Positions 13,558-50,280 are shown, numbered from the stretch's first letter. The stretch: DNA of 64,000 bases from IMGVR_UViG_3300042879_006196:283393-347392, one strand, 5' to 3'. Program-made: numbers and translations. Notes: generated by a model from the letters alone, not told the origin.

Positions 13558-14790
13558 ATGTCATTAATTGAAAAAGGAAAACTTAGAATTGAATGGGCAG
13601 CAAGAGAAATGCCTGTTCTTGAATCAATCTATCAAAAATTTCTCCAAGAACAACCTTTCACTGGGAAAAGTGTTGCTGCTTGTATGCATATCACCACTGA
13701 AACAGCAAATCTAATTAAAACTTTAGCTGCGGGAGGGGCTACAATTTATCTTTGTGCTTCCAATCCACTTTCTACACAAGATGACGTAGTTGAGGCTCTC
13801 AATTCTGAAGATAATATTCATGTATTTGCCAAACATGGTGATGACACTGAATCCTACTATTCTCATATCAAAAAAGTTTTGAGTTACAAGCCACATCTTG
13901 TTATGGATGATGGCTGCGATTTGGTCAATTATTTGTATACTCAAGAGCCACTTCTTTTAGAAAACGTAATTGGTGGAACCGAAGAAACTACTACAGGAGT
14001 TCAAAGACTCACTGCTATGGAAAAAGATGGCATTTTGAAATATCCAATTATTTGTGTTAATGATGCCCTCACAAAACATATGTTCGATAATCAGTATGGC
14101 ACAGGACAATCAACAATAGATGGTATTATACGTGCGACAAATATTCTTCTTGCTGGAAAAGTAGTGGTAGTGGCTGGGTATGGTTGGTGTGGAAAAGGTT
14201 TAGCTGCTAAAGCCAAAGGTATGGGCGCTAGAGTGGTTATTACTGAAGTGGATCCAATTAAAGCATTGCAAGCTCACATGGATGGATTTGATGTTTTAAC
14301 AATGGATGTAGCTTCTGCTTGTGGTGAAATATTCATTACTGTGACTGGTAACAAAAATGTTATTGACGTTAAACATTTCAAACAAATGAAAGATGGAGCA
14401 ATTTTATGCAATTCTGGTCATTTTGATTCTGAAATAAACATTAAAGGTTTAGAAGAATTTTCATTAAGCTTTAGACCTGTAAAAGATAATATAGAAGAAT
14501 ATACCTTAGAAGAAGGTAGAAAAATTTATGTACTTGGTGAAGGAAGGCTTGTAAATCTTGCGTGTGCAGAAGGACATCCGTCGTGCGTTATGGATATGTC
14601 TTTCGCTAACCAAGCTTTATGTGCACAATTTTTATGTGCAGATTCAAATTTGCAACCAGGCTTGTATACAGTGCCAGCGGATATTGATCAACTTGTTGCT
14701 GAACTTAAACTGCAATCCTTAGATTTGCAAATTGATGAACTTACTGAAGAGCAATTCAACTACATTAATAGCTGGCAAGAAGGCACTTAA
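13558..14790 (+). CDS. ahcY: S-adenosyl-L-homocysteine hydrolase
   Basis: HITTETANL, SNPLSTQD, EETTTG, KHMFDNQYGTGQS, GYGWCGKG, GHP..VMDMSFANQ. Confidence 0.97.
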   Translation: MSLIEKGKLRIEWAAREMPVLESIYQKFLQEQPFTGKSVAACMHITTETANLIKTLAAGGATIYLCASNPLSTQDDVVEALNSEDNIHVFAKHGDDTESYYSHIKKVLSYKPHLVMDDGCDLVNYLYTQEPLLLENVIGGTEETTTGVQRLTAMEKDGILKYPIICVNDALTKHMFDNQYGTGQSTIDGIIRATNILLAGKVVVVAGYGWCGKGLAAKAKGMGARVVITEVDPIKALQAHMDGFDVLTMDVASACGEIFITVTGNKNVIDVKHFKQMKDGAILCNSGHFDSEINIKGLEEFSLSFRPVKDNIEEYTLEEGRKIYVLGEGRLVNLACAEGHPSCVMDMSFANQALCAQFLCADSNLQPGLYTVPADIDQLVAELKLQSLDLQIDELTEEQFNYINSWQEGT

Positions 14791-14814
14791 TACAATACTA
14801 AAGAATAAAATATT

Positions 14815-15078
14815 ATGTCAGAATATCCGATTGTCACCTTACAAAATGAAGTAGAAGTACAAGCTGCTATTACCACAAACACTTTCAAGATTTTACAAGT
14901 CTTAGAAAATCCTGATGAAATGTGGGTAAATGCCTTTGTTTCTGGAGCTCCACAAAATTCATGGGTGTCTGTTTTAAATCCAGAAAATTACACTCATGAA
15001 TGGACAGATCAAACGGTAGTAGATGCTGTTACCTTATGGGCTGAAACTAATTTCCCTCCTGCTATAAAAAGATCATGA
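14815..15078 (+). CDS. Hypothetical protein
   Basis: AGG-N31-ATG upstream. Confidence 0.6.
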   Translation: MSEYPIVTLQNEVEVQAAITTNTFKILQVLENPDEMWVNAFVSGAPQNSWVSVLNPENYTHEWTDQTVVDAVTLWAETNFPPAIKRS

Positions 15079-15413
15079 CAAACCTTTACCATTTAAATAC
15101 AAAAAATTTTAGTACTCATTGTTTTGCTCATACTCCTGAGGAAGCTTTAGAGCACATTAAAGAAAATTGTAATTTTAGACCATGTTATTCATATGTAATC
15201 AAATTGGTAGAAGACGATACACTAAATGAAGATGGTGTTAGTTTTTTGAGAGAAAAGAATTTTATTGGTATACCAAAAGTAAAATTCTTTCTACTTAATG
15301 GCTCGGAAGCACATTGGTATGATCATTTTCACAATCAGAAAAAAACTCACTCTTTGTGGTGGTCTGAAAAAGTTCCTGGTTCAGAAAATCTTTGGAAGAA
15401 AGAAACCGTATAA
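15075..15413 (+). CDS. Hypothetical protein
   Basis: ATGA overlap. Confidence 0.55.
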   Translation: MTNLYHLNTKNFSTHCFAHTPEEALEHIKENCNFRPCYSYVIKLVEDDTLNEDGVSFLREKNFIGIPKVKFFLLNGSEAHWYDHFHNQKKTHSLWWSEKVPGSENLWKKETV

Positions 15414-15419
15414 TTATTC

Positions 15420-15803
15420 ATGAATGTTAAAAAAGTGAAGTGGTTTACTGAAGAATTAGTAAAATCTAATCCAGATTGTGTATTTATTTTTGGTGACAAT
15501 CTTTTAAAAGTGGGTAAAGGTGGTCAAGCTATAATACGTGACCATTTCAACGCTTATGGAATTCCAACAAAAAAGCACCCTTCAATGTCACAAAATTCAT
15601 TTTTTTATGATAGTGAGTATGATGATAATTGCCAAATTATTTTATCTGCAATAGATAATATCCCAAAGAATTTTTCACAGATTGTGTTCCCTATAGATGG
15701 ACTGGGGACTGGACTTGCAAAACTTAATGTTACAGCTCCAAAAACATATAAATTTCTGATTGATACAATAAATAATAGATTCGGAGATATATATGAATAC
15801 TGA
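15420..15803 (+). CDS. Conserved phage protein (FGDN...GGQA..R...GIPTK family)
   Basis: Motifs VFIFGDNL, GKGGQAIIR, AYGIPTKK, GLGTGLA. Confidence 0.65.
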   Translation: MNVKKVKWFTEELVKSNPDCVFIFGDNLLKVGKGGQAIIRDHFNAYGIPTKKHPSMSQNSFFYDSEYDDNCQIILSAIDNIPKNFSQIVFPIDGLGTGLAKLNVTAPKTYKFLIDTINNRFGDIYEY

Positions 15804-16245: not shown

Positions 16246-16592
16246 AAGAAAGGTGGATTTTATATTTTGATGGTGCATGCCCTCTGTGTATCAAATCCCA
16301 AAATTCTTTGAAAAAGTATTTACCTGAACACATCAAACTCACTGCTGTAGATTTGAATAGTCAAATAGCTAAAAATAAAGGATATGATTTAAAACAGGTT
16401 GTGCTTGAGACTACAGAAGGTGTTTTCTTTGGGTACAATGCTTGGTTAAAGATTTTAGCCCAAACAAAATTTGCGTGGGCTACTTCTTTATTTTTCAGAC
16501 CGTGTTTTATTGTGTGTTATTTTTTAATATCAAAAAACAGAAAAATAATTTCAAAGTTTTTCATTAACTTTATCAAAAATTATACTTTTTAA
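16242..16592 (+). CDS. DCC1/DUF393 thiol-disulfide oxidoreductase-like
   Basis: LYFDGACPLC (DxxCxxC). Confidence 0.8.
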   Translation: MKERWILYFDGACPLCIKSQNSLKKYLPEHIKLTAVDLNSQIAKNKGYDLKQVVLETTEGVFFGYNAWLKILAQTKFAWATSLFFRPCFIVCYFLISKNRKIISKFFINFIKNYTF

Positions 16593-19055
16593 CTCGTCAT
16601 ATTTTTTACCTTGTTCAAGTTCTGGCAAAATATCTGAAAATTCACTTGAATTAATTACATCATACATCGCTTGTTCTTCTATTCCTCTAAGTTCTTGAGG
16701 CATATCACCTTGTGTTTTTAAATTATCATCTGTAGTTGGAGTGGGCACTCTTGGAAACAAATTTTCCGTATCTTCTGAATCAATAATTGTATCTGAAACT
16801 GGCATGTCATTTGCTAAGTTTCCTATTTCATCATCAATTAATTTTGTTGCTTCTGCTGATTCACTATCAGTATTTTCATCAAGTATATCTGCAATTCTTG
16901 AAAGTCGCACGATGTTTTTTAGAATATTTGCTTTTGTGATGTTGTACATTAATGTTTTATTCTCCAATAAATCAAAAGAACCTGTTTTTAAATTTTTACT
17001 CAAGTTAAAAGAAACCACTGTGTTTTCACAAAAAGTGAGTAGTTCTAATTCTTTATCATCTTTATTTTTGATATCATTGCACCACTGAATTATTTTTTCT
17101 AAATCATTATCTGATAATCTTAGTTGCTTGATACAATTTTTTAATTCGTTAATCTTTTGAAATTTAACTTTGAATGAAGGAGTACTTTGTCTCATTTTGT
17201 TTATTTCTTCTTTGAGAGAGCTTAGTTCTTGTTCATTTTCATTCAATGAATTGAGTTTAAATCTTATGTTTTTTTCTTGTTCAATTATAATTCTTTGCAG
17301 TTCTTGATTATAAATTGCATAATTTGATTCTCCAAGTACTGTTCTAATCAAATTAAGATATTTTGATTTCATTTCCTTTGGAGATAAATCAAAATAAAAA
17401 TTTCTCAACATAGATTTTATTTGATTTTTTTGATCTTTTATTGCTGGAAATGTTTTAGAAATTTTATCAATTACACTATCGTCAATCATCCAAGGTTTAG
17501 TTATTTTAATTGATTCTTCTAATATTTTTCTAGAAATTGCTGCATCCAGTTCTTTTTCTGTCGCAAGTATGAATGAAAGTGCACTAGATTTTATTTTTAT
17601 TTCAGCATTGTTAGGATTATTGATGTTTAAAAAATTGGATAAAAATTGTTTTTGTTCATCAGTTTGATTACATGATTTATACCAAGTGATTAATCTTCCC
17701 AAAGGGGTATCACGTTGTGGCGCTCTGTTTACCGTAAAAAGGATATTCTTTTTTGTTAATTCCTTTTGAATCATTTTTATAATTTCTTCTGGATTGTCGG
17801 TTTTTGGCTCAGTAAAATGTATTATGTTACAATTAATTGTTTTTGCGAAATTATCTTCTGCATTTACTTTGACTTTGTGTTTAAAATCATATTGAGCAAC
17901 TTTAAATTCATTTTTACTTAATGATTTATATTCATCAATGTTTGGGTTTTCAGATCTTTGTTGCAAAAAAGAATCAAATTTTCTTCGATCACTTTCACTT
18001 AAGGTGTATCCGAAATATTCACCAACAAGCATTATTTCCGTTTCAATTTCAGGAATTTCATTTTGTTTTATTTCATTCAAATCGCTTTTTAACACATCGC
18101 AAACCACAATGAAGTCAATTAAAAAGTATTCATAAATTGATTCTTCTGGTGATGGAATTTTCATTTTTGAGGGAATATATCTTATATTAAAAACTTCTTT
18201 TAAAGTAGATAAAACTTTTTTTTCTTTGAGTGATGAATATGTAAATTTAAATTTTTCTGGAAATTCTTCTACAAATAATTTATTTTCTTTTAATGGTTGA
18301 ATTCTTTCTTTCAAAAGTTTCAAATCTTCACCATATAAATCACACAAATATGCATAAAATTTTTCTTCATTTCTATCTGATTTATTATAGGCTGTATTTA
18401 GTTTTTGGAGTATTTTTGTATTATCATCTACCATAGAGCGATAGATTTGTTCAGGTGCTTCTTCAGACCAAAAATCAAAACCCAAGTCATTTAATTGTCT
18501 TTTAAAAGTTTCTTTTCCAAATTCAGTGTCAATTGTTTTTATTCGAGACATGTTTGTTTCTGAACTTCTTCCCAGCATCTCATTTAATTTATTTAGAACT
18601 TCAGATTTTTCCACTGACTTCATGTCTAATTTTTTTTCAAGATCTTCTCTGTTATATTTCACTGATAATTTTGCTAAAATTTCTTCAGGTAATTGACCAT
18701 TAATCAAAAATTTGTTCCACCATTGATCAGATTTATATTTAAAAACATTTTTTGACATTGTGCCAGCTAAATCTTTAATCTCGTCATCAGTGTAATTTTC
18801 TATGCCAGGTGTTTTATTTATTTTTTCTTTGACTTTTTCTTCTATTATTTTATTTCTTTCGAATCTTAAAAAATTTTGAATTATACTTAAATCAATATTG
18901 TTAATCAAATCATAAATAAAATTTTGTGTTATTGTAACTTTGTGTTCAATTATTTCTTTAAAAATTTCTTCTGTGATTACAGTAGCCCAATATTGTTTTT
19001 GAGCTTCGGTTAATTTTGTAGCTGCAAACAAAAGTTTATTTTTTATATCTAACAC
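16551..19055 (-). CDS. Large hypothetical protein, probably a fusion with a nested C-terminal gene starting at 16949
   Basis: 834-aa ORF; AGG-N31-GTG at the start and AGG-N31-ATG internally. Confidence 0.7.
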   Translation of the reverse strand: MLDIKNKLLFAATKLTEAQKQYWATVITEEIFKEIIEHKVTITQNFIYDLINNIDLSIIQNFLRFERNKIIEEKVKEKINKTPGIENYTDDEIKDLAGTMSKNVFKYKSDQWWNKFLINGQLPEEILAKLSVKYNREDLEKKLDMKSVEKSEVLNKLNEMLGRSSETNMSRIKTIDTEFGKETFKRQLNDLGFDFWSEEAPEQIYRSMVDDNTKILQKLNTAYNKSDRNEEKFYAYLCDLYGEDLKLLKERIQPLKENKLFVEEFPEKFKFTYSSLKEKKVLSTLKEVFNIRYIPSKMKIPSPEESIYEYFLIDFIVVCDVLKSDLNEIKQNEIPEIETEIMLVGEYFGYTLSESDRRKFDSFLQQRSENPNIDEYKSLSKNEFKVAQYDFKHKVKVNAEDNFAKTINCNIIHFTEPKTDNPEEIIKMIQKELTKKNILFTVNRAPQRDTPLGRLITWYKSCNQTDEQKQFLSNFLNINNPNNAEIKIKSSALSFILATEKELDAAISRKILEESIKITKPWMIDDSVIDKISKTFPAIKDQKNQIKSMLRNFYFDLSPKEMKSKYLNLIRTVLGESNYAIYNQELQRIIIEQEKNIRFKLNSLNENEQELSSLKEEINKMRQSTPSFKVKFQKINELKNCIKQLRLSDNDLEKIIQWCNDIKNKDDKELELLTFCENTVVSFNLSKNLKTGSFDLLENKTLMYNITKANILKNIVRLSRIADILDENTDSESAEATKLIDDEIGNLANDMPVSDTIIDSEDTENLFPRVPTPTTDDNLKTQGDMPQELRGIEEQAMYDVINSSEFSDILPELEQGKKYDELKSIIFDKVNEKL

Positions 19056-19104
19056 AATCTTATTTTAAAAGAAATTTAATCAAAAACCTACCGTATATAT
19101 AATA

Positions 19105-19779
19105 ATGATTATAAGCTGTTCGTACAAAAAAAGAGTGGGCAAAGATACATTTTGCCGAATTGTTAAAGAACTTTATCCTGATAAGAAGGTGGAAAGAGTA
19201 GCTTTCGCTGATGAGCTCAAAAAAGAATTAGACACAATCTTACTTATACCTAATGGCTTATCAAGAAATATGTTTGAGGATGACAATGTAAAAGAAATTG
19301 CCAGACCTTTACTACAAGGATGGGGCACAATTCGTAGAGAGTTTTGTGATAAGAATTATTGGGTAAAACTGGCTTTTTGGAGAATGCAAGACCCAGACAC
19401 AATCTACATTATCACTGACGCAAGATATTTAAATGAAATCGAATTTATCAACTCTCAAGGTGGGCACACTGTTCATATTAAAAGGGATTTACACGGATAT
19501 AAGGCGTGGCTCAAAAGTCTTTCACATACTAAGTATTCTTGGGCTTCACACATTCTGCTCAGACCGTTTTTGATTGTGTTTTATCAGATTGTGTCTAGAA
19601 ATAAAAAGTTTTTGAGCAAATCTGCAGACCCATCATCTTCTCATTCTTCAGAAACTGAATTAGACAATTATCATCATTTGTTTAAATACACAATCGAGAA
19701 TAATGGAACAGAAGCTGAGTTCAAAGAAAAAATTAAAATAGTTGTAGAAGATATATTTAAGCAGGAAAAAAAAATTTAA
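19105..19779 (+). CDS. Deoxynucleoside monophosphate kinase with a 42-aa DCC1-derived insertion
   Basis: KKRVGKDT P-loop, FADELK, RPLLQGWGT..R, YWV, ITDARYLNE, HSSE, IENNGT. Confidence 0.8.
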   Translation: MIISCSYKKRVGKDTFCRIVKELYPDKKVERVAFADELKKELDTILLIPNGLSRNMFEDDNVKEIARPLLQGWGTIRREFCDKNYWVKLAFWRMQDPDTIYIITDARYLNEIEFINSQGGHTVHIKRDLHGYKAWLKSLSHTKYSWASHILLRPFLIVFYQIVSRNKKFLSKSADPSSSHSSETELDNYHHLFKYTIENNGTEAEFKEKIKIVVEDIFKQEKKI

Positions 19780-19796
19780 ATACCTAAAAACAGATT

Positions 19797-22622
19797 GTGT
19801 GGTATCGGTATTGCAGATTAATTATAGCGAAAAAAGAACATATAATTGCCAAAATTTACAATCATTTTAGGGAAGAATATGAAAATTCTCCAAATGATTT
19901 ATATATTCTTGATGATATAAAAGAAAAATTATTAAAATTAGATGAAATAAATTTTTTTGATCAAAACATAATTGAATTAAACACTGATAAAAACACTAAT
20001 AAAAAAACTGTTAATTTTTTAGGAAAAGTTTGTGAAAGTTTAACTGATTTAGCAGAAGCTGTTGATCCCGTGTACGATGAAGTAATGTACAAAAAAGAAT
20101 ATAAACAAGAAAAGAAAAAACAACAAAGTTTACAAGCTTTAGAGTTTATTGCTGGAGAAGTTCAAGTATATCCCTGCAATGATGTCAATGATACAATAAG
20201 ATTTGGAAGGGGTACCACTTGGTGCATTTCTCAACCTGGTACAGGTATTAAAGCTTATAACTCATACAGACTTAATCACCAATCTACTTTTTACTATGTG
20301 CAAGATGGAACAAGAACAGACAATTTGAAAAGAGTGATGGTAGATATGCAAGCAAACGGTGTTGTCAAACTCACTGATTTTGGTAACACCACTGGTACAA
20401 TAGCTGAATTTGGTACAGATTGGCAAGCATATTTTGACTATTTGAAAGAAGAAAAAGAAGTAGATATTTCTCAATTTGTTAATAAACCATTAACAGAAGA
20501 AGAAAAAAAAGAAATCAATACACTTAGTGAAAGAAACACCGATTACGAATGGTTTAAAAAATTATCATCAGATTATAAATCTAAATATATTGGCATGGGT
20601 CATCTTTTGTCTGATGATCAACTAAGATATATTTTGAAAAGTTCTTTGAAAGACATTTTAATTCGGGAGTACTTGAATACAGGTACCTGTATTACAGAAA
20701 GCCAAAAAAATATGTTATTTACAAATAATCAATACAAAAATACTTATGAGTTTAGAAGAACAAATTATATTAATGAAATAAAAGCACAAGTTACTGAAGA
20801 TTACAAACTTAAAAATTTAGCACTGGGTTCAAATGATTTCGATTTAATCACAGAACTTATAAATGAAGGAAAAATTACAAAAGACCAATTCATGAAAGTT
20901 CAGTCTCCTGAAATGTTCTTTTTTTTGATGGATCAAGATTTTGATAAAAAGCGTTTAGTTGAATCTAATGCAGAACATAATTTTACAATTGACTATTTAA
21001 GTTCATTGCCTGCAAACGAGAGCAAAAATCTTTTATCTGGGGTTCTTTTAAGTAATCTGGCTGCAATTAGAAAACTTTATGCTAATGGTATGATAACTAG
21101 CAATAATATAAATTGGTATGCCGTATTTATATGGAATTATGGATTTGAATTTTCAGATATCGAATTGTTTAGTAACTTGTATAAACAAAGTGTTTTTCAG
21201 GAAGATATCGATCAAAAATTGAAACAAACTGAAGTTAAAACTCAATATAAAGCAGCTTTTTACCTTTCCAATAATATTAAAACAGATAAACCAATTGATT
21301 TCGCAACTATATTATCTATAGGTATTGATGAAAAGCTTAAAGCTTTTTATTATCAATATTTTGATACCTTAACGCCAGATCAAAAAAAATATATTCTTGA
21401 TAGAGTATCTTTTGGTTATGGAAATAATAATTTCTTAATATCATTGGGTAAAAAAATAGATTCTCTTGATGAAAAAGATCTATTTAGAGTCATAAACTCA
21501 GCTGACGCACAAGCAATGTTTGCTTTATCAAAACAACTTGCAAAAAATGATTTGCAAATTTTGATCAACGATGATAAAGCAAGATTCAGTAATCAACTTA
21601 CCATACAATGGCTTTTAAGTAATAATTTTGATGTGCAAGCCAAGAATATGGATTTTGCAGCACTTTTTTCTTCTGATCATGAAATAGCAGATTTTGTTTT
21701 TGAAAAATTTGAAAACTTAAGTAGTGAGGAACAAAAAAAACTGTTTGGTAGCTTTTACGTCCAACCAAAATCTATTAAAGTAGCAAAATATTTATTTGAA
21801 AAAGGCGCATCTTATTTCTTAAGGTTTGTTACATTCGACATCATTGATGCAATAATTAGTTCTATGACTAATCTGCCTTATGAAGCATGGGATAATATTT
21901 CAGGTAATGAAAAAATTTATAACAACAACGAATTTATTATGAAGTATATACCAAATTTAATTGGTAAATTTAGTTTTGCATATAGTGCTCCGTTAAGATT
22001 TTTTGACCTTATCTTTGAGAAATTTAACAATTTTGAACGTAATCAAGATTGGATAGTAAGACAATTTTGTTCTCATAATAAATCTTGCAATGAACAAGTG
22101 GCAGAAAAATATATAAAAAAATATCCTAGCTTAAAAGAAGTTATTATTCAAGCTTTTGTGGATAATTATAGCGGTAAAATTCCTTCAGAAGATTTTATAA
22201 ATAAATATTACGATGAAATTTCAGAATTTATTGGTTATCTTTATCGCTATAAAAATTTTACTGAAGATTACATAAGAAAATTTGCTGACAAAATAAAATT
22301 TGATAGAGTTCTTATGTCAACAAAAAATTTATCAAATGAATTTTTTGTTGATTTTGAAGAAAAAATTGCTGAGATTCCTGATCGTGAAATGAATGATATA
22401 CTAGAAAATACAACGTTACCTGAATATTTTTTGAGTAAATTTGCACATAAATTTAATGATTATAATTGGCGCCAAATATCAAGAAAATTTCAATTATCTG
22501 AAAATTTTATTATAAAATTTGCAGATAAATTAGATTTTCAATATATTAAATATAATGAAAATATTCCAGACGTAGTGAAACAAAATTTAAAAGTAAAAGG
22601 ATATGCAGTTGATATATTATGA
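19797..22622 (+). CDS. Large MWY-initiated protein with a WCI domain and C-terminal ~22-aa helical repeats
   Basis: GTTWCISQPG..YNSYR..TFYYV; repeated LSExFIxKFxDK units. Confidence 0.65.
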   Translation: MWYRYCRLIIAKKEHIIAKIYNHFREEYENSPNDLYILDDIKEKLLKLDEINFFDQNIIELNTDKNTNKKTVNFLGKVCESLTDLAEAVDPVYDEVMYKKEYKQEKKKQQSLQALEFIAGEVQVYPCNDVNDTIRFGRGTTWCISQPGTGIKAYNSYRLNHQSTFYYVQDGTRTDNLKRVMVDMQANGVVKLTDFGNTTGTIAEFGTDWQAYFDYLKEEKEVDISQFVNKPLTEEEKKEINTLSERNTDYEWFKKLSSDYKSKYIGMGHLLSDDQLRYILKSSLKDILIREYLNTGTCITESQKNMLFTNNQYKNTYEFRRTNYINEIKAQVTEDYKLKNLALGSNDFDLITELINEGKITKDQFMKVQSPEMFFFLMDQDFDKKRLVESNAEHNFTIDYLSSLPANESKNLLSGVLLSNLAAIRKLYANGMITSNNINWYAVFIWNYGFEFSDIELFSNLYKQSVFQEDIDQKLKQTEVKTQYKAAFYLSNNIKTDKPIDFATILSIGIDEKLKAFYYQYFDTLTPDQKKYILDRVSFGYGNNNFLISLGKKIDSLDEKDLFRVINSADAQAMFALSKQLAKNDLQILINDDKARFSNQLTIQWLLSNNFDVQAKNMDFAALFSSDHEIADFVFEKFENLSSEEQKKLFGSFYVQPKSIKVAKYLFEKGASYFLRFVTFDIIDAIISSMTNLPYEAWDNISGNEKIYNNNEFIMKYIPNLIGKFSFAYSAPLRFFDLIFEKFNNFERNQDWIVRQFCSHNKSCNEQVAEKYIKKYPSLKEVIIQAFVDNYSGKIPSEDFINKYYDEISEFIGYLYRYKNFTEDYIRKFADKIKFDRVLMSTKNLSNEFFVDFEEKIAEIPDREMNDILENTTLPEYFLSKFAHKFNDYNWRQISRKFQLSENFIIKFADKLDFQYIKYNENIPDVVKQNLKVKGYAVDIL

Positions 22623-25245: not shown

Positions 25246-25267
25246 AAAGCCCTCAATTGAGGGCTTT
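25246..25267. terminator. Bidirectional terminator/palindrome
   Basis: AAAGCCCTCAATTGAGGGCTTT between convergent genes. Confidence 0.75.
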
Positions 25268-25721
25268 AAGCATCTTGAAAAACTAATTTTTGAATTCCAT
25301 CTTCCTTAACTGTTCCAACCTGAACAGCACCTGCAGAATTTATAAGTTGGTCTGCTCCTCCAGAAGATCGATTAATTTTTGAGCCATTACATGAAATATA
25401 TGGCAAATCTGGATAACCATTTGATCTCAGCCAATCTTTGAAAGCATTTGCATCTCCTGCGATAAGGTTTCCTCTTTCTCCAAAAACTAATTTTCCATCT
25501 TCAGTGCCGTGTAGCAACCAAATACTCCTTTGTGTTCCATCGCTTGTTTTGATTTGCACTTGTTTAGGTGGGTCATCAGGTCCCATAAAAAACTGACCTC
25601 CTACCAATTCTACTTCAAGCCTTCCTTCACTTCCTGAGGGAATCATTTGCCTATAAGAATTGGGATCTAATTCTTGAACATTAGGATTTTGTGAACTGAG
25701 TTTGCTGAATTTGTACCACAC
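25266..25721 (-). CDS. MWY-initiated hypothetical protein
   Basis: MWYKFSK; AGG-N31-GTG. Confidence 0.65.
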   Translation of the reverse strand: MWYKFSKLSSQNPNVQELDPNSYRQMIPSGSEGRLEVELVGGQFFMGPDDPPKQVQIKTSDGTQRSIWLLHGTEDGKLVFGERGNLIAGDANAFKDWLRSNGYPDLPYISCNGSKINRSSGGADQLINSAGAVQVGTVKEDGIQKLVFQDA

Positions 25722-25732
25722 AATTTATATTT

Positions 25733-26269
25733 TCAGCTAAAAAAAGTAAAATCCTTGTCGGTAAATTTTTCACATTCTTCAAAAGGTTTACCAAGTTTGT
25801 CTTTATCTGACACAATCTGAGGAAAATCTTTCCAAGGAATGTCAAGACTGTTGTAAAGTAAAGATCTGTCATTTTCTTGACAATAATAATTAGAGCATTT
25901 GTAATAAACCACGCTATTATCTTCTAGCGATTGAAATCCATGTGCAAAGCCTTCTGGAATAAATATAGCCAAATGATTTTCGCTTGATAATTCGATGTCA
26001 AACCATTTACCAAAATAGGGCGATTGCTCTCTTAAATCTACAGCAACATCATATATTTTTCCTGCCAAACAATACACTAATTTTGCTTGTGGAATTTGAA
26101 CTTGATAATGCATGCCTCTAATCACTCCTTGTTTAGAAATTGAACAATTATCTTGAACAAATTTAACAGGAAAAATTTTATCTTTATGCAAAAAAGTTTC
26201 AGTGAATTGTCCTCTATAATCTTGGAAACATTTTAAATTAACTATTTTAATTCCACCAAAAGGCTCCAT
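25733..26269 (-). CDS. rmlB-pathway rmlC: dTDP-4-dehydrorhamnose 3,5-epimerase
   Basis: DYRG.F, RGMHYQ, QAKLV, DVAVDLR, FAHGF, SDKD. Confidence 0.92.
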   Translation of the reverse strand: MEPFGGIKIVNLKCFQDYRGQFTETFLHKDKIFPVKFVQDNCSISKQGVIRGMHYQVQIPQAKLVYCLAGKIYDVAVDLREQSPYFGKWFDIELSSENHLAIFIPEGFAHGFQSLEDNSVVYYKCSNYYCQENDRSLLYNSLDIPWKDFPQIVSDKDKLGKPFEECEKFTDKDFTFFS

Positions 26270-26319
26270 ACACTATTTATACACCAGGAAAATATTGATG
26301 ATAAGTTTAAATTAATAAA

Positions 26320-29064: not shown

Positions 29065-29082
29065 AATCCGTATATTAAATGT

Positions 29083-37007: not shown

Positions 37008-37595
37008 ATGAAAAAAAATAACGATAATATAAGTGGAATGAATGATACCACAAATAGAGAAAAATTCGAAAAACTTTACAAGCAATCCCGTAGCAAACTT
37101 TACGGGATTGCTTTGTCTGTTGCAAGGGATGCAGATTTAGCAAATGATGTGTTGCAATTAGCCTATCTTAAAGCTTGGCGTAATTTTGATGAATATGATC
37201 AAAACAAAAAGTTTTTAAATTGGATGACAACAATTGTTAGAAATGCTGGCATTGATCAAACAAGACAAAAGAAAAAACACAATCTTGCATTTTCAATTGA
37301 TAGTTTGACTAATCCCACTGATGATAACAAATATCAAGAAATGTATATCGAAGATAAATCTTCTGATATAATGCAAAATTATGAAAGAAAAGAATTAATG
37401 CAAGCAATACAAAAAGAAATCTCTAAAATGCCTGAAGAGCTCAAGCTGGTTTTTATACCATTTGTCAAAGGTTTAACTTATGAAGAAATTTCTCAAGAAA
37501 CAAATGTAACCCTTGCTACAGTAAGAGCTAGAGTTCACCGAGCAAAACAAATTTTAAGAAACAATGAAAATCTTGAAAACTTAGCAAGTTTTTAA
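37008..37595 (+). CDS. ECF sigma factor
   Basis: DVLQ.AYLKAW, WMTTIVRN..ID, YEEIS...TVRARVHRAK. Confidence 0.88.
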   Translation: MKKNNDNISGMNDTTNREKFEKLYKQSRSKLYGIALSVARDADLANDVLQLAYLKAWRNFDEYDQNKKFLNWMTTIVRNAGIDQTRQKKKHNLAFSIDSLTNPTDDNKYQEMYIEDKSSDIMQNYERKELMQAIQKEISKMPEELKLVFIPFVKGLTYEEISQETNVTLATVRARVHRAKQILRNNENLENLASF

Positions 37596-38525: not shown

Positions 38526-38599
38526 AACTTTATTAAGGTATTTTCAGAAATACTTAGATTCAAATAGGTTCAAATTGTGAATTTCCTTAATATAGGTTT

Positions 38600-39154
38600 G
38601 TGAACCACAAAAATTTAACACCTATATTCAAATTAAATAATCAGCTTTCACAAATAGAGAAAGTTAGTTTGGCTAATTTAATTGCTTTTCCAAATGATGT
38701 GGCACAAGATTTGTATGATGATATATTTAATACAAATGAAAACACTGCCATTGGCATGATTGTATTAAGCACTGGTTTTATTATTGGTGGATTTGTTATA
38801 AAAATAATCCCAGGCTACCAATCAATAGCGTTAAAAGAAATTATAATAAATCCAAAACTTAAATCACCGAAGCACACATCAAGAATGATTGACTATATAG
38901 GTGATTATGGTCTAGAAATTTTTGGGGAAAATTTCAAAGGCATATTTACAACCACGCTTTGTAATAAAAACAAAAAAGATCTGAATAACAAAAATTTTGT
39001 AAAAAGAAAAAGTATGTTAAATTCAGGAGCTATCACAGTTAAAGAATGTGCAAGAGTAAAAAATAATTTCATGCATTTCATTTACATTCCTTTCAATGGA
39101 GGACATGAATCGGATGAAGTTAAAGAAATTTTCTGGCAAATTGCGAAGAGCTAA
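38600..39154 (+). CDS. Hypothetical protein, possibly a degenerate GNAT fold
   Basis: AGG-N31-GTG start; weak GNAT-like pattern. Confidence 0.45.
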   Translation: MNHKNLTPIFKLNNQLSQIEKVSLANLIAFPNDVAQDLYDDIFNTNENTAIGMIVLSTGFIIGGFVIKIIPGYQSIALKEIIINPKLKSPKHTSRMIDYIGDYGLEIFGENFKGIFTTTLCNKNKKDLNNKNFVKRKSMLNSGAITVKECARVKNNFMHFIYIPFNGGHESDEVKEIFWQIAKS

Positions 39155-39901: not shown

Positions 39902-40052
39902 ACACAAATTTACAATCTTAGGGTTGTTGGCATTGAGTCTTTTATTCATTGAAGATAAAGATTTATTTGTTGTCCTTTTAATTGGCTCAATGATTGCTAT
40001 TATTTACTCTTTTGTCAGGAATAAGCTTCATTGAATTAGAAATAAGTAAGAT

Positions 40053-40823
40053 ATGTCAATATTCATTAAGCCTTATACTCGTGAATATAGTGTTATTGAC
40101 CCAATTAAATCTGAATTTGATTCAAGTATAATCGTAAATAATAAAATTAAACCAGAATTAAGAGAAAAAATTTTAAAAGCTACAGAAAAAATTTCAGATT
40201 ATGTTGGACATGAGATAGATAAAATTTGGATTTTAGGTTCTTTACTTACTCATCAATATTCTGAAGATTCAGATTTAGATGTAACTTTTTTTTTGAAGGA
40301 TTCTCTAAACCCAGAAGATTACAAAGAGCTAAATAAAACGTGTGCTGATAAATTTAATGATAAGCTTTTTGTTGAAAAACATCCTATAAATTTCTTTTTT
40401 GCAAAACCAAAATTCTTGAAGTACAAATCAGATGCAATTTATGACTTGATTAATGAAAATTGGATTAAAAAGCCAGAAATTTTGTCAGAAGATGACGTTG
40501 AGGAAATAATTCGCAATTGCTCTTCGCTAGATGAATTTAATACAATATTAGAAGAATACACTAATTTAAAAAATCTATTAGAAAACTTTGAAGGTGACTC
40601 CTCACAAATGACTGAGATTTTGAAGCAAACAGTAAAAGTCTCTAAAATGTTCAATGAATTAAAAGACATCAGAAGAAAAGATTTTGAAAAAAAACCTGAT
40701 CCTAATTTGCCTTCAGCAAATTTCAGATGCAGTAATATAATTTTTAAATTATTAGAGCAATATGGTTTAGGGGATATCGTTAATGATGTCAGTGAGTTTA
40801 TTTCTTTTAGACTCAAAAATTAA
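40053..40823 (+). CDS. Pol-beta superfamily nucleotidyltransferase
   Basis: LGS.....YSEDSDLDV; AIYDL...WIKKP. Confidence 0.75.
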   Translation: MSIFIKPYTREYSVIDPIKSEFDSSIIVNNKIKPELREKILKATEKISDYVGHEIDKIWILGSLLTHQYSEDSDLDVTFFLKDSLNPEDYKELNKTCADKFNDKLFVEKHPINFFFAKPKFLKYKSDAIYDLINENWIKKPEILSEDDVEEIIRNCSSLDEFNTILEEYTNLKNLLENFEGDSSQMTEILKQTVKVSKMFNELKDIRRKDFEKKPDPNLPSANFRCSNIIFKLLEQYGLGDIVNDVSEFISFRLKN

Positions 40824-41957: not shown

Positions 41958-42031
41958 AAAAAGCAATAATTTTTGATTTAAATCTTTGATAAAATAAAGG
42001 ATTATTGCTATAATGTCAGAAAATATGAAGA

Positions 42032-43153
42032 ATGAAAGAAATTTTTTCAAAAATATCTGAACAAATAATGCATTCGCCAAATTTAAAACATTTAATTTTA
42101 GCCATTGGATTGAAATATAATACTTCAAATTACATTAAAGTTTCAAATTATATTAAAAACAATAATATTAATGATAGTCATTTCCCTCACCCAAAAGATA
42201 AATTAAAATATATTTCGAATGAAGTGTTTATAGAAGCATATCACAAATCAAAATCTCTTGGTGAACTTTTGTCTCAACTTGGATTAAATCACTCTTACTA
42301 TAAAAAATTGCATAAAAAAATTTTTGATTTGAAATTAGATGTTTCAAAATTTCAATTTGTTAAATGGTCTGAAGCTGAAATTGAGTGTCTCAAAGAAAAT
42401 TATCCTACTAAAACAGAAGATGAATTAAAAATTTTATTTCCTAACAGAACAATTGAAGGACTACAAAGATATGCTTGTTATTATAAAATTAAAAAAACAA
42501 AAAATAATGTTTCTTCTAATTTACGTATTCTTTTAAATAATAATTTAGAATCTTTATATTGGATAGGTTTTATTATGGCTGATGGTACAATTGATTTAAA
42601 ACGTGGCAGGTTGAAAATTTCTGTTGACAAAAAAGATGCAGAACATTTATTCAAGTTTAAATCCTATATTGAATGCGAAAATTCTGTGAAAAATTATTGT
42701 CAATCAAAAAACGCTTTTGGCATTAGTGATTTAAGTGAAATTTCTTTATACAATAAAAATGTTATTGAGAAAATCTCTGACAAATTTAATCTTAAACCAA
42801 AAAAAACATATAATCCTCCTGATTGTAAAATTTTTGAACAATTCGAAATTAATCAAATTTTGTCTTTGATTATAGGCTACATAGATGGAGATGGATGTAT
42901 TTATAAAAATAAAAATGGAAACATTGACATTAAAATAGTTAGTCACGAAAGTTGGATTTTTGTTTTTGAGTTTTGGCAAAAATGTATTGAAAAAAAATTC
43001 AAAACAAAAATTCCTTTTGCGAAAATAAATAGTTCAAAATTGTCACAAATAAATTTTAGCAAAAAACAAATTATTTTTGAATTAAAAAAGTTTGTTGAAG
43101 AAAATAATTTACCTGTACTCGAAAGAAAATGGAATAAAATTTCGTATAGTTAA
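42032..43153 (+). CDS. Free-standing double-motif LAGLIDADG homing endonuclease
   Basis: WIGFIMADG and IIGYIDGDG; C-terminal LERKW. Confidence 0.85.
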   Translation: MKEIFSKISEQIMHSPNLKHLILAIGLKYNTSNYIKVSNYIKNNNINDSHFPHPKDKLKYISNEVFIEAYHKSKSLGELLSQLGLNHSYYKKLHKKIFDLKLDVSKFQFVKWSEAEIECLKENYPTKTEDELKILFPNRTIEGLQRYACYYKIKKTKNNVSSNLRILLNNNLESLYWIGFIMADGTIDLKRGRLKISVDKKDAEHLFKFKSYIECENSVKNYCQSKNAFGISDLSEISLYNKNVIEKISDKFNLKPKKTYNPPDCKIFEQFEINQILSLIIGYIDGDGCIYKNKNGNIDIKIVSHESWIFVFEFWQKCIEKKFKTKIPFAKINSSKLSQINFSKKQIIFELKKFVEENNLPVLERKWNKISYS

Positions 43154-46632: not shown

Positions 46633-46697
46633 TCTTGCTTTGTTTTCCAGGTTTAACATTTTTCTAGTATAATTAACCAGGAAGTCAGAATTAAATA

Positions 46698-48351: not shown

Positions 48352-48352
48352 A

Positions 48353-49789
48353 TTATATCACCATTTGTCTTAACGTAATTGTCGAAGTGTTCAATAAAAT
48401 ATATACATAATTTATCATTGTGCCACCATCTTTGTAAACAATATTAAACGCAGTGTCTCCAAGTAAAGCTGCGCCGTTCGGATAAAACATTGTGGTCCAA
48501 CCTGTCATGTTTGATCTAGGAATATTGAAATCGAACCATCGTCCAGTAGCATCTTTCTGAATATATAGGCTATTATCAACATAAGAATATTTTGTTCCAG
48601 TAGTAAATGTTTCTACAGCAGGAGAATATGTTACAGCACTCCATATTCCTAAAGGAATATCATATCTGTCAAGGAGAGCTCCAGCCGCTCCTCTAAACGA
48701 ATAGATATATTTTCCATTAAGAATAGCAGATTGATTCGTCCAATCAGAATCTGTGCAATCATCAATGAAATGAGCTGACATACCTGTACCTGGAGCACCA
48801 CCTCTTGCCACGCCTGGATTAAGTTGTATCCATGTATTTATACCTATAGAATATCTGTAAAGCTGAACTGAGTTGTTTCCTAAAAAGTAAAGAAAATCAT
48901 CATTGGCTTCAATAGAGTAAATTGATGTTGTATCAGGTGTTGTTATCCATGTGGCAACACCTAAAGATGTTGCAGTATTTGAAATAATTGTTCTGATTTG
49001 CCCTGCTCCTGCTCCACCCTTTAATCTTACTTGATAATTTACCCATTGGTTGGTTGTCCATGTTTTTGTATTATCAGAAATCGTAGTTGTAGTTGCGGCT
49101 GAAGCTAAACCTACTGAAAAAGAATTATAGTCTGTAGCATGACCATGCCAAGCTGCTGTAGGAACTAATTTTGCATCAGTACCCACTGTTGCTGGAAAAT
49201 TAACAATGCTTAAAGAAATGTAAGTGTTTGTAGCGTAGTCATAAACCCTATATGAACCTGCGGCAAGAGTACCAGCACTTAAAAGGTAAAAGCGAGGCGT
49301 TATGAGTCTGTATCGAGTTTCTGTACTGAAACCACTCGCTTGTGGAGCAACAAAAATTGTTGCATTGGCTCCAACTGTGTTTGATACAATACCCAAGGTC
49401 AAACCAGAATTTGGTCCTGATAAAATATTAACATGGTATCCTCTTAGATCTCTAGCCAAGCTTTGGTTTGTAATTATTGTTTGATTGCTTCCACCAAGAG
49501 CAGACAATGACGTAATACCTACAGATGATCCAAAAGATATGGGGTGACCAGCTCCACACGCTCCAGCGCCAAATGCACCTGTAAGTGCAGGTGAGGGCAC
49601 TTGTACCCAGCCATCTTCATAAGGGTTATATAAATATGCCACAGTAGCTGAGACCACATATAATTGTTGTTGATTGACTCCATTACTACTTACAATATGT
49701 GCTCCAGCGACTGTAGCCGTTGGAGCAGGTGTTACCATTTCCCATCTTTTCAAATCAAGTATTTTTCGATTTCCATTTGTGGTAGCCAT
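48353..49789 (-). CDS. Beta-propeller/kelch-like putative virion protein
   Basis: Thr/Gly-rich; YRYSI..NTW and DRYDI...W blade-like units; duplicated G.G.GQ.R.I.SNT unit. Confidence 0.55.
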   Translation of the reverse strand: MATTNGNRKILDLKRWEMVTPAPTATVAGAHIVSSNGVNQQQLYVVSATVAYLYNPYEDGWVQVPSPALTGAFGAGACGAGHPISFGSSVGITSLSALGGSNQTIITNQSLARDLRGYHVNILSGPNSGLTLGIVSNTVGANATIFVAPQASGFSTETRYRLITPRFYLLSAGTLAAGSYRVYDYATNTYISLSIVNFPATVGTDAKLVPTAAWHGHATDYNSFSVGLASAATTTTISDNTKTWTTNQWVNYQVRLKGGAGAGQIRTIISNTATSLGVATWITTPDTTSIYSIEANDDFLYFLGNNSVQLYRYSIGINTWIQLNPGVARGGAPGTGMSAHFIDDCTDSDWTNQSAILNGKYIYSFRGAAGALLDRYDIPLGIWSAVTYSPAVETFTTGTKYSYVDNSLYIQKDATGRWFDFNIPRSNMTGWTTMFYPNGAALLGDTAFNIVYKDGGTMINYVYILLNTSTITLRQMVI

Positions 49790-49790
49790 A

Positions 49791-50231
49791 TTAATTCACT
49801 GTTATATTCCTTCTTAAATTGTCTGCCGCAAATTGCATTATAGCTGGGATCTGAGGGACAGCTGATAAACCTCCCATTTGCGATTGGTTAGTCAAAGTAG
49901 TTACAGTAGTTACAGTAGTTACAGTAGTTACAGTAGCAAGCGTAAGGTTTGCTGTTATTGAATCTAAAAGTATCCTCAAACGTCCTGATGTATCAGGATA
50001 AGCTAAACCAATTGTTCGGTTCAAGGATTGCACACTCATCCTAATTGCCTCTAAACATTCAACAATTTCTCCTTGTGTAATTGTAGCAGGTAATGGATTT
50101 GTCAAAGAGACATCTGTGGCAGTGCCATCCTCACCAAATGATTGTTTTACTCTTTGGTATTGAATACCTCCAACATCATCTGAGGCTATGAGTGTAGAAC
50201 CGCTAGGTGCATAGTTTACATTATCTGGCAT
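49791..50231 (-). CDS. Putative virion protein with VTT repeats
   Basis: YQRVK..GEDG..DVS..NPLP motif; (VTT)n. Confidence 0.55.
   Translation of the reverse strand: MPDNVNYAPSGSTLIASDDVGGIQYQRVKQSFGEDGTATDVSLTNPLPATITQGEIVECLEAIRMSVQSLNRTIGLAYPDTSGRLRILLDSITANLTLATVTTVTTVTTVTTLTNQSQMGGLSAVPQIPAIMQFAADNLRRNITVN
49896..49936. repeat. Tandem 9-bp repeat (AGTAGTTAC) x4.5
   Basis: Seen directly; encodes VTT on the minus strand. Confidence 0.9.
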
Positions 50232-50280
50232 TATTTATATTTTACATCTAAAACACAATCTCACCTTTTTTAAATAAAAA

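What the first reader, a model, noticed from the sequence alone, without database searches (positions are those of the whole stretch)
14781..50266. Class 2 promoter: AGG exactly 31 nt before the start codon, marking a likely late regulon
Seen: AGG-N31-start before 14815, 19797, 26320, 38600 (+) and 16949, 19055, 25721 (-); N32 at 50231 and N33 at 40053. An A-rich (G/A)AAATA-like box lies about 5-8 nt before the start, GTG starts are frequent and SD sequences are mostly absent. These genes lack the class 1 box and include the lysozyme, both MWY proteins and the putative virion operon. Inference: -35 AGG/-10 AAATA promoter for a phage sigma factor (candidates at 35710 and 37008), producing leaderless late mRNAs.
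Basis: partly seen in the sequence, partly recalled or inferred. Interest (0 to 1): 0.7.

Follow-up and report, generated by a model that had tools for sequence, protein, structure and literature searches.

The report
SigH-type leaderless promoters in a jumbo phage
The AGG-N31-start pattern is a real, conserved promoter class of a 347-kb freshwater jumbo phage. It looks like a SigH-type promoter placed so that transcription should begin on the start codon itself, giving mRNAs with no leader, but no transcript data exist to prove this.

Summary
All nine listed sites exist. In the whole 347-kb genome AGG starts at -34 in 29 of 336 called genes, against about 3 per position elsewhere (P about 1e-17). 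All 29 also have AA at -11/-10, 26 have T or G at -12, 25 have T at -1, and 12 start with GTG.

The motif is therefore AGG-N19-(T/G)AA-N9-(A/G)TG. The same peak, the same logo and the same orthologous genes recur in two related phage contigs whose spacer sequences have diverged.

More distant relatives keep AGG-N18/19-GAAT upstream of genes but put an SD-bearing leader of 10-80 nt after it. That makes it a promoter, not a translation signal.

Sequence, spacing and box-to-start distance match published SigH promoters. The phage encodes a SigH-like sigma factor, but outside the window at genome 119943-120662, not at 35710 or 37008.

Class 2 genes include the endolysin, the prohead protease and the head of the major-capsid operon. 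A second fixed-distance class, YGTAnAAT at -14..-7, precedes replication, nucleotide and chaperone genes, so "late" is plausible.

Leaderless starts, timing and the sigma assignment are inferred. The only RNA-labelled runs that hold this phage appear to be DNA. Site 16949 is an in-frame ATG inside a continuous ORF.

The parts
14781..14817 (+). Class-2 promoter, geometry (19,9), ending on the ATG of the 87-aa ORF 14815-15078
   Evidence: AGG at -34, GAA at -12.
19053..19089 (-). Class-2 promoter (19,9) ending on the GTG of the 834-aa ORF 16551-19055. Divergent from 19135(+).
   Evidence: The start overlaps one copy of AGATTGTG.
19763..19799 (+). Class-2 promoter (19,9) ending on the GTG of the 941-aa MWY protein 19797-22622 (C-terminal phrog_3532 domain)
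25719..25755 (-). Class-2 promoter (18,10) ending on the GTG of the 151-aa MWY protein 25266-25721
26286..26322 (+). Class-2 promoter (19,9) ending on the ATG of the endolysin gene 26320-27114. Divergent from 26269(-).
   Evidence: (phrog_315 endolysin, 1.8e-20).
38566..38602 (+). Class-2 promoter (19,9) ending on the GTG of the 184-aa ORF 38600-39154, just after the tmRNA gene
40017..40055 (+). Class-2-like site with AGG-N33 (19,11). If functional it implies a leader of about 2 nt before the ATG of 40053-40823.
   Evidence: Outside the +-1 tolerance used for the counts.
41998..42034 (+). Class-2 promoter (18,10) ending on the ATG of the 373-aa endonuclease-like gene 42032-43153.
50229..50266 (-). 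Class-2 promoter (19,10; AGG-N32) ending on the ATG of 49791-50231, followed by 48353-49789. A hairpin plus T-run lies just upstream.
59198..59234 (-). Class-2 geometry (19,9) ending on the ATG of the TnpB-like transposase gene 58037-59200.
33747..33784 (+). Weak class-2 match (20,9) that also carries a class-3 box, before the second TnpB-like gene 33782-34999
16947..16983 (-). Probably chance, at most an internal start.
   Evidence: (single 834-aa ORF). One search gives 99 such relaxed matches away from called gene starts in the 347-kb genome (both strands).
37008..37595 (+). ECF-like sigma factor (195 aa). Driven by a class-1 promoter 55 nt upstream, with a leader.
   Evidence: Only a weak 25% hit in one relative.
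35710..36408 (+). Weak sigma-like protein (232 aa). SD-led, behind the class-3 gene 35034.
   Evidence: No orthologue in the relatives examined.

Best explanation
Class 2 is a sigma-70-family promoter of the SigH type. Its form is AGG(A/T) at -34..-31, an 18-nt spacer, then (T/G)AA(A/T) at -12..-9.

The most likely reader is host core RNA polymerase carrying the phage's own SigH-like sigma factor. That gene lies at genome 119943-120662, outside the window, and is itself behind a class-3-like -10 box.

The -10 box sits exactly 9 nt (8-10) before the start codon, and T(-1)/purine(+1) is conserved. Transcription is therefore predicted to begin on the A or G of the start codon. The first gene of each such unit would then be translated from a leaderless mRNA. 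Downstream genes of the same operon use ordinary SD sites.

About 43 genes head such units. They include the endolysin, the prohead protease, the head of the major-capsid operon, large proteins of the virion module and the MWY protein family. This is most simply a middle/late regulon switched on once the SigH-like factor has been made.

**Shown:** the motif, its geometry, its statistical excess, its conservation in relatives, its decoupling from the start codon in distant relatives, and the presence of a SigH-like sigma gene.

**Inferred:** the transcription start position, which sigma reads it, and the timing.
For: **The motif is real**
- AGG peak at -34: 29 genes against about 3 expected.
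- Of those 29, all have AA at -11/-10, 26 have T/G at -12, and 25 have T at -1.
- The (19,9) spacing cell stands out from its neighbours.

**It is conserved**
- The same peak appears in G005 (17/127 genes) and G006 (12/75), with the same logo.
- Orthologues keep the class: 13/15 in G005 and 8/8 in G006, against 4/80 for non-class-2 genes in G005. Spacer positions are only 19-50% identical.
- Metagenome loci L042 and L044 keep AGG and GAA before the same two genes while the spacers differ.

**It is a promoter, not a translation signal**
- In distant relatives AGG[AT]-N17-18-GAA[AT] is about 6 times enriched upstream of genes: 0.53 per kb against 0.09 per kb inside genes.
- There the GAA-to-ATG distance runs from -12 to about -84 (histogram bins to -90), and the longer leaders carry SD sequences.
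- Prohead-protease orthologues are a clear example.

**It is of SigH type**
- Published SigH promoters have -35 AGGA and -10 GAAT with a 17-18 nt spacer (PMC12456013), written RNAGGAWWW / RNNGAATWW in PMC8510167.
- *C. difficile* SigH promoter strings read AGG-N18/19-GAA(T/A). The strings, which appear to end at the mapped TSS, stop 8-11 nt after GAA in five of the six I counted; one stops 16 nt after (PMC7438776, Table 3).
- The sigma at 119943-120662 hits the SigH models best (116 bits, E 1e-33; next family 59 bits).
- Its metagenomic homologues are named "sporulation-specific sigma factor" by JGI.
- It is present in all relatives examined.

**Leaderless geometry**
- SD occurs in 3 of 149 promoter-adjacent genes against 56 of 187 others (P 6e-13).
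- Start codons in these genes are only ATG or GTG.
- N-termini align from residue 1 with SD-led orthologues.

**Functional split**
- Class 2 heads the endolysin, the prohead protease and the capsid operon.
- Class 3 heads DNA pol III alpha, the sliding clamp, ThyX, dNMP kinase and chaperones.

**Canonical promoters do not explain the region:** TTGACA/TATAAT-type promoters are not enriched there (74 found, 70.8 expected).
Against: - There are no transcript 5' ends. The RNA-labelled runs that hold this phage behave like DNA. Start position and timing are therefore untested.
- The SigH-like protein scores below NCBIfam's curated cut-off (116 bits against 212-295).
- At -12 the phage prefers T (18) over the canonical G (8). 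The next base is A or T, not strictly T.
- The genome has three other sigma-like genes, and none can be excluded.
- Class 2 also precedes genes that are not obviously late: a CCA-adding-enzyme fusion, an endonuclease-like gene and two TnpB-like genes.
- TerL, the portal and the capsid gene have no class-2 box of their own.
- Two class-2 calls (129575, 145364) overlap an SD-like AAGGAG.
- Gene starts come from my own simple caller, though longest-ORF starts give the same peak.
- Efficient leaderless GUG initiation is unusual in well-studied bacteria.
Confidence: 0.62

Rival explanations
1. The promoter and the leaderless output are the same, but the cognate sigma is one of the other phage sigma-like proteins. 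Candidates are the ECF-like factor at window 37008-37595, the weak sigma-like 35710-36408, or the 184-aa region-4 protein at genome 122518-123072.
For: - All are sigma-70-family hits.
- 37008 is behind an early-type class-1 promoter, so it is made early enough to switch on later genes.
- 122518 is conserved in all relatives, like the SigH-like gene.
Against: - ECF promoters typically use an AAC -35 and a CGT -10 (my own knowledge). Class 2 does not.
- 37008 has only a 25% hit in one relative and 35710 has none, although these contigs are partial. The class-2 motif is present throughout the clade.
- Only the 119943 gene matches the SigH family, whose published consensus fits the motif (PMC12456013).
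Confidence: 0.17
2. Class 2 is read by a host-encoded alternative sigma factor, and the phage simply mimics a host regulon.
For: - The motif resembles a cellular (SigH) consensus.
- The host is unknown. Hints point to freshwater Bacteroidota: one binned contig and resemblance to the bS21 phages of PMC9723584.
Against: - The phage carries its own SigH-like gene, conserved across the clade.
- SigH is a Bacillota factor, not known from Bacteroidota (my own knowledge).
- Replication of the motif in every relative that has the phage sigma fits a self-contained system.
Confidence: 0.1
3. AGG and the A-rich box act at the RNA level, as a translation enhancer, standby site or processing site, within longer transcripts that start elsewhere.
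For: - The distance to the start codon is fixed.
- The A-rich context before starts is general in this genome.
Against: - In distant relatives the two boxes keep their mutual spacing but move 20-90 nt away from the ATG, with an SD in between.
- The motif occurs in divergent intergenic regions with no upstream co-directional gene.
- It matches a known promoter consensus, including the box-to-TSS distance.
- Its SD-free status fits the absence of a 5' UTR.
Confidence: 0.06
4. It is a chance or compositional artefact in an AT-rich genome, or a by-product of upstream genes ending in AGG-TAA.
For: - In the window alone the excess is modest (6 against 2.07; 2 of 100 shuffles reach 6).
- Several sites do overlap an upstream AGG-TAA gene end.
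Against: - Genome-wide P is about 1e-17.
- All 29 co-occur with AA at -11/-10.
- The peak is independently replicated in two other genomes.
- The motif persists at divergently arranged genes that have no upstream stop codon.
Confidence: 0.01

Closest known systems
SigH (sigma-H) dependent promoters of Bacillota (*B. subtilis*, *C. difficile*, *Sporomusa*)
   Same: - -35 AGG(A) and a -10 AA core within GAAT-like sequence.
- A 17-18 nt spacer between AGGA and GAAT.
- TSS about 8-11 nt after GAA (PMC12456013, PMC8510167, PMC7438776).
- The cognate factor is a short sigma with regions 2 and 4.
   Different: - The first -10 base is T more often than G, and the fourth is A or T.
- The sigma is phage-encoded and scores below the SigH equivalog cut-off.
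- The promoters abut start codons, so there is no 5' UTR. Cellular SigH transcripts have leaders, and leaderless mRNAs are rare in those bacteria (7 and 15 cases in the two TSS maps cited).
Phage-encoded sigma cascades (SPO1 gp28 and gp33/34; T4 gp55; phage homologues of sporulation sigmas)
   Same: A phage-made sigma redirects host core RNAP to a later gene class that has its own consensus. SPO1 middle promoters also have an AGG-containing -35 (from memory, not tested here).
   Different: - T4 late promoters have no -35 element, whereas class 2 has one.
- None of these systems is described as placing the start site on the start codon genome-wide.
- The jumbo phages with mapped start sites (AR9, phiKZ) have leaders of 26 nt or more and no leaderless transcripts (PMC5312081, PMC8244752).
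Leaderless transcriptomes (Mycobacterium, Deinococcus; lambda cI from PRM)
   Same: - A -10 box at a fixed distance of about -12..-7 from the start codon.
- No SD.
- Start codons ATG or GTG (PMC3898074; Shell et al., as cited in PMC8244752).
   Different: - Here the arrangement is in a low-GC phage and spans three promoter classes, including one for an alternative sigma.
- A sister clade of the same phage group uses SD-bearing leaders for the same genes.
Freshwater bS21-encoding huge phages (Chen et al. 2022, PMC9723584)
   Same: - Lake origin.
- About 300-350 kb and 31-34% GC.
- Many tRNAs, PhoH and a bS21 gene.
- Probably the same broad group, with predicted Bacteroidetes hosts.
   Different: - That paper contains no promoter, sigma-factor or leaderless analysis.
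- Membership of this genome in their clades was not tested.

Membership tests
SigH-type promoter | -35 element AGGA (RNAGGAWWW) | tested here: met
   AGG defines the set. The next base is A in 15 and T in 11 of 29, followed by W-rich positions. The same holds in G005/G006.
SigH-type promoter | -10 element GAAT (RNNGAATWW) | tested here: inconclusive
   AA is invariant (29/29). The first base is T in 18 and G in 8. The fourth base is A in 18 and T in 10. This is a variant of GAAT, not identical to it.
SigH-type promoter | 17-18 nt between AGGA and GAAT | tested here: met
   AGG-N19-KAA is the dominant geometry, with 18 and 20 as minor forms. This equals an 18-nt spacer after AGGA, as in PMC12456013 and the Table 3 strings of PMC7438776.
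SigH-type promoter | Transcription depends on SigH holoenzyme, with a TSS about 8-11 nt after GAA | not testable with these tools
   The start codon lies 9 nt (8-10) after KAA, which is the expected TSS position. No RNA 5'-end data are available.
SigH sigma factor (NCBIfam TIGR02859 / PRK08295) | Score above the curated equivalog cut-off | tested here: not met
   The best hits are the SigH models at 110-116 bits against cut-offs of 208-295. It is SigH-like, not an equivalog.
SigH sigma factor (NCBIfam TIGR02859 / PRK08295) | Regions 2 and 4 present, with SigH as the clearly best family | tested here: met
   PF04542 and PF08281 both hit. SigH models score 116 bits against 59 for the generic ECF model. 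JGI names the homologues "sporulation-specific sigma factor".
Leaderless mRNA | mRNA 5' end at, or within a few nt of, the start codon | not testable with these tools
   Inferred only from the -10 box at -12..-7 and from T(-1)/R(+1).
Leaderless mRNA | No SD, and a start codon of AUG or GUG | tested here: met
   SD occurs in 3/149 promoter-adjacent genes against 56/187 others. Class-2 starts are 29 ATG, 14 GTG and 0 TTG.
T4-type late promoter (gp55) | -10 TATAAATA only, with no -35 element | tested here: not met
   Class 2 has an invariant AGG at -34, and its -10 differs.
Canonical sigma-70 promoter (TTGACA-17-TATAAT) | Enrichment of the consensus upstream of genes | tested here: not met
   74 found against 70.8 expected in window 13.5-28 kb. 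Class-2 -35 regions do not resemble TTGACA.

The most novel reading that the evidence does not exclude
This phage lineage has converted nearly every operon-leading gene to a leaderless mRNA. About 150 of 337 genes are affected, across three promoter classes. It pairs this with its own bS21 and IF3 genes to re-tune the host ribosome. The result would be a virus-imposed two-mode translation regime, with leaderless first cistrons and SD-led internal cistrons. The host may be a Bacteroidota species that normally uses neither mode. The SigH-like sigma and its roughly 43-promoter regulon would be the late arm of that programme. The sister clade, which keeps SD-bearing leaders on the same genes, would record the evolutionary transition.
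Probability: 0.25. Interest if true: 0.8.

Novelty: new variant of a known kind. Interest (0 to 1): 0.62.

Why it matters
If the predicted start sites are confirmed, this would be a large uncultivated phage whose temporal programme can be read directly from sequence.
- Three promoter classes would each be fused to start codons.
- One of them would be driven by a phage-borne SigH-like factor.

It would also give a natural comparison of how a regulon moves from leadered, SD-dependent mRNAs to leaderless ones, using sister clades with the same genes and the same promoter.

The phage's own bS21, IF3 and tmRNA genes would become testable as tools for steering host ribosomes.

In practice the motif improves start-codon and operon annotation for a widespread group of freshwater jumbo phages.

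Tried and rejected
**RNA evidence**
- Both searches for sequencing runs returned only "METAGENOMIC RNA-Seq" runs. When laid on the window these behave as DNA: even low depth and no 5' pile-ups.
- The only true metatranscriptomes listed are tiny and have no coverage.
- The second read-laying run was therefore not spent.

**Searches that gave little**
- A megablast of 20 kb against GenBank phages found nothing.
- PHROGs and Pfam left most class-2 proteins unnamed, so "structural" rests on a few named genes and on position in the virion module.
- Single-protein scans of IMG/VR with the endolysin and with the sigma gave one hit and none. An alignment query was needed.
- Host identification failed. 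The GTDB genome scan gave only one 7-kb contig binned as Bacteroidetes.

**Readings rejected**
- Class 1 is not a SigH-type promoter. It shares AGG-N18-TAA, but the resulting TSS would fall inside the gene.
- The GTGTGGTAT of MWY genes is not an extended -10 box. The M-W-Y-R/K N-terminus is conserved with synonymous codon changes, and with ATG in a relative.
- Site 16949 is not a gene start.
- An upstream AGG-TAA gene end does not explain the motif, because it persists at divergent genes.

**A circularity to note**
- The identity profile is partly circular at the motif positions, because the pairs were chosen as class 2 in both genomes.
- The unbiased measure is the concordance table.

Full report
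**Context**

The window is the last 64 kb of a single 347,392-bp contig with 33.6% GC. It is a jumbo phage.
- Structural genes: large terminase, portal, major head protein and prohead protease.
- Cell-like genes: Hsp70, SAH hydrolase, a Y-family polymerase and several sigma-like genes.
- Translation genes: 22 tRNAs, a tmRNA, bS21 and IF3.

DNA runs that hold it come from lake-water metagenomes. It resembles the freshwater bS21 huge phages of PMC9723584, which are 293-331 kb with 31-34% GC and have predicted Bacteroidetes hosts. That paper contains no promoter analysis.

**Checking the observation**

All nine sites exist as written. Eight are the first start codon of their ORF. Site 16949(-) is an in-frame ATG inside the uninterrupted 834-aa ORF 16551-19055.

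I called 337 genes with a simple caller: a codon-usage log-odds score plus a start-context matrix limited to -20..-1, so that position -34 could not influence start choice. I then profiled AGG upstream of all starts.
- Background is about 3 genes per position.
- Position -34 has 29 genes and -33 has 12.
- Excluding class 1, the -34 peak has Poisson P 1.3e-17.
- Purely mechanical longest-ORF starts give 27 against 2.7, P 3.5e-18.

**Anatomy**

Among the 29 genes with AGG at -34:
- A is at -11 and -10 in all 29.
- T or G is at -12 in 26.
- A/T-rich positions fill -9..-7.
- T is at -1 in 25.
- 17 start with ATG and 12 with GTG.

A two-dimensional scan of both spacers singles out AGG-N19-KAA-N9-RTG. 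It gives 40 genomic hits, 26 at called starts. Neighbouring cells give about 10 hits and none at starts. Allowing +-1 nt on each spacer gives 43 genes, 11 of them in the window. None carries the class-1 box.

**A wider pattern of promoters fused to start codons**

A third class, not in the finding, has YGTAnAAT at -14..-7 and no -35 element. GTA sits at -13 in 49 genes, and about 69 genes qualify with +-1 nt. Palindromic TTGTACAA boxes serve divergent gene pairs whose starts are only 23 nt apart, for example window 6395(-)/6418(+).

Class 1 is a hairpin followed by TTTTCCAGGTTTAACA-N9-TTATAATAGAT-ATG. It heads about 42 small genes, mostly at genome 38-66 kb.

SD motifs are used in this genome, but by other genes. 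They occur in 56 of 187 genes without an adjacent promoter box and in 3 of 149 with one (P 6e-13). The simplest reading is that operon-leading genes are leaderless and internal genes use SD.

**Relatives**

Protein-guided searches recovered related phage contigs.

*Two closer relatives:* G005 (166 kb) and G006 (62 kb), whose SigH-like sigma is 75-77% identical.
- AGG at -34 occurs in 17/127 and 12/75 genes, against means of 2.2 and 1.1.
- The logo is the same: 28/29 have AA at -11/-10, 25/29 have T at -1, and 12/29 start with GTG.
- Class membership follows orthology. 13 of 15 class-2 genes stay class 2 in G005 and 8 of 8 in G006. Only 4 of 80 non-class-2 orthologues gain the motif in G005.
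- Spacer positions are only 19-50% identical.
- Loci L042 and L044 show the same footprint before the genes downstream of the terminase.

*Distant relatives:* G003 and G009, whose sigma is 44-45% identical.
- They have an SD peak at -12..-10 and no AGG peak at -34.
- They still have the class-3 peak at -13.
- AGG[AT]-N17-18-GAA[AT] is about six times denser upstream of genes than inside them (0.53 against 0.09 per kb).
- The box lies anywhere from -12 to about -84 relative to the ATG (histogram bins reach -90), and longer leaders carry SD sequences.
- The prohead-protease orthologues are a clean example. They keep AAGGAA-N-GAATAAT, followed by a leader of about 25 nt containing GAGGTG.

The two boxes therefore belong together as a promoter. 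Their fusion to the start codon is a derived feature of this sub-clade.

**Which sigma**

The genome has four sigma-like genes.

| Gene | Size | Best description | How it is expressed | In relatives |
|---|---|---|---|---|
| Window 37008-37595 | 195 aa | ECF-like | Class-1 promoter 55 nt upstream, with a leader | Weak 25% hit in one |
| Window 35710-36408 | 232 aa | Weak sigma-like | SD-led, behind the class-3 gene 35034 | None |
| Genome 122518-123072 | 184 aa | Region 4 only | No promoter box of its own | Found in three of four |
| Genome 119943-120662 | 239 aa | SigH-like | Class-3-like box | Found in all four |

The gene at 119943-120662 lies among replication genes.
- Its best NCBIfam matches are the sporulation SigH models at 110-116 bits (E 1e-32 to 1e-33).
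- This is well above the next family (59 bits) but below the curated cut-offs.
- JGI names its homologues "sporulation-specific sigma factor".

Published SigH promoters match class 2.
- They have -35 AGGA and -10 GAAT with a 17-18 nt spacer (PMC12456013), written RNAGGAWWW and RNNGAATWW in PMC8510167.
- *C. difficile* SigH promoter strings read AGG-N18/19-GAA(T/A).
- Those strings appear to end at the mapped start site. Five of the six I counted stop 8-11 nt after GAA, and one stops 16 nt after (PMC7438776 Table 3).
- Class 2 has the same boxes and the same spacer, and its start codon lies 9 nt after KAA.

I therefore assign class 2 to the SigH-like factor, by analogy only.

**Timing**

Class-2 genes with a recognisable function:
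- the endolysin (window 26320)
- the prohead protease
- the gene immediately before the major head protein, which itself has only an SD
- large proteins of the virion module, one with NHL repeats
- the MWY/phrog_3532 family
- also a CCA-adding-enzyme fusion, an endonuclease-like gene and two TnpB-like genes

Class-3 genes:
- DNA pol III alpha, the sliding clamp and the SigH-like gene itself
- ThyX, dNMP kinase, GMP reductase and a radical-SAM protein
- DnaJ, GroEL and Hsp70
- sugar-nucleotide and glycosyltransferase genes

This split fits a cascade in which class 1 and class 3 come first, the SigH-like sigma is made, and class 2 follows. It is gene-content evidence only.

**Comparison with known systems**

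The promoter type is known from cellular SigH regulons, and phage-encoded sigma cascades are known. Two things are unusual.
- The SigH-type promoters are systematically fused to start codons, within a genome where two further promoter classes are arranged the same way.
- Jumbo phages with mapped start sites show the opposite. AR9 has 5' UTRs of 26-491 nt (PMC5312081), and phiKZ has no leaderless transcript (PMC8244752).

**Limits**
- No transcript data could be obtained.
- The host is unknown. The only hints are one Bacteroidetes-binned contig and resemblance to PMC9723584.
- Many class-2 proteins have no recognisable family.
- Gene starts come from a home-made caller, cross-checked with longest-ORF starts and with N-terminal alignment to orthologues.

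Noticed in passing
Window 3870-3882, 6396-6417, 9165-9187, 11879-11905, 29070-29082, 52191-52203 and many others; genome-wide: A third promoter class, YGTAnAAT at -14..-7 from the start codon with no -35 element, precedes about 50-70 genes. It is also conserved in the distant relatives G003 and G009. Palindromic TTGTACAA boxes sit between divergent genes whose starts are 23-28 nt apart, for example 6395(-)/6418(+), 9164(-)/9188(+) and 11878(-)/11906(+). The genes are replication, nucleotide, chaperone and sugar-metabolism genes.
   Followed up: partly
Whole genome; 61 copies in the window, e.g. 19792, 29039, 38411, 50254(rc), 60141(rc): The 10-mer CAGATTGTGT is by far the most frequent word in the genome. 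Its 8-mer core occurs 389 times, against roughly 13 by my rough estimate, on both strands and in all reading frames. It overlaps the start of MWY genes, lies reversed in the class-1 promoter spacer, and sits just 5' of some class-3 boxes. It is also enriched in the close relatives G005 (33 copies) and G006 (19) and is absent from distant ones. Its function is unknown.
   Followed up: partly
Genome 14.4-33 kb (loci L001:14400-20000 and L002), outside the window: An array of at least 58 (perhaps about 100) tandem small ORFs of 25-77 aa, many overlapping by 4-8 nt. Each has an SD (AAGGTG) and starts MINTDCV(E/K), followed by [DNEK]QV[WRY]-type four-residue repeats. The array takes up about 5% of the genome. 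My gene caller missed them.
   Followed up: partly
Window 19797, 25721(-); genome 68910, 72591, 74901, 80474(-), 81442(-), 172150(-), 168257(-); G003 144504, 159603, 166769, 167616: Otherwise unrelated proteins of 105-941 aa share the N-terminus M-W-Y-(R/K)-(Y/F/L). Codons vary synonymously, and the start is ATG in a relative where this phage uses GTG. This points to a protein-level N-terminal signal, possibly for targeting or processing.
   Followed up: partly
Window 38142-38526 (+): A phage-encoded tmRNA (Rfam RF00023, 108 bits; ARAGORN tag peptide AKKNRRNGFGSAQAGFAMVA) lies directly upstream of the class-2 site at 38566.
   Followed up: yes
Genome 86284-86439 (-), 2296-2550 (+), and tRNA clusters at about 171.4-173.3 kb: The phage encodes ribosomal protein bS21, an IF3-like protein and 22 tRNAs. 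bS21 and IF3 both act in translation initiation and could bear on the use of leaderless and SD-led mRNAs.
   Followed up: no
Window 36953-37010, 46646-46700 and 52302-52336; genome 38-66 kb: The class-1 cassette is a hairpin CCCCCTCCAAAGGGGAGG followed by TTTTCCAGGTTTAACA-N9-TTATAATAGAT-ATG. It heads about 42 small genes. Its TATAAT lies only 4 nt from the ATG, which is an awkwardly short distance for a start on the A. Two window copies (before 37008 and 46698) have leaders of about 25 nt instead, and one of these drives the ECF-like sigma gene.
   Followed up: partly
Window 33782-34999 (+) and 58037-59200 (-): There are two TnpB/OrfB-like transposase genes (phrog_506, E 1e-132 and 1e-135). 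Both have TAGGTG about 35 nt before the start and class-2-like geometry.
   Followed up: no
Genome 128026-128031, 129542-129547; L042 and L044 equivalents: In tightly packed operons the -35 AGG of the class-2 promoter is the last sense codon of the upstream gene, followed by its TAA stop (AGGTAA). This arrangement is conserved in relatives.
   Followed up: partly
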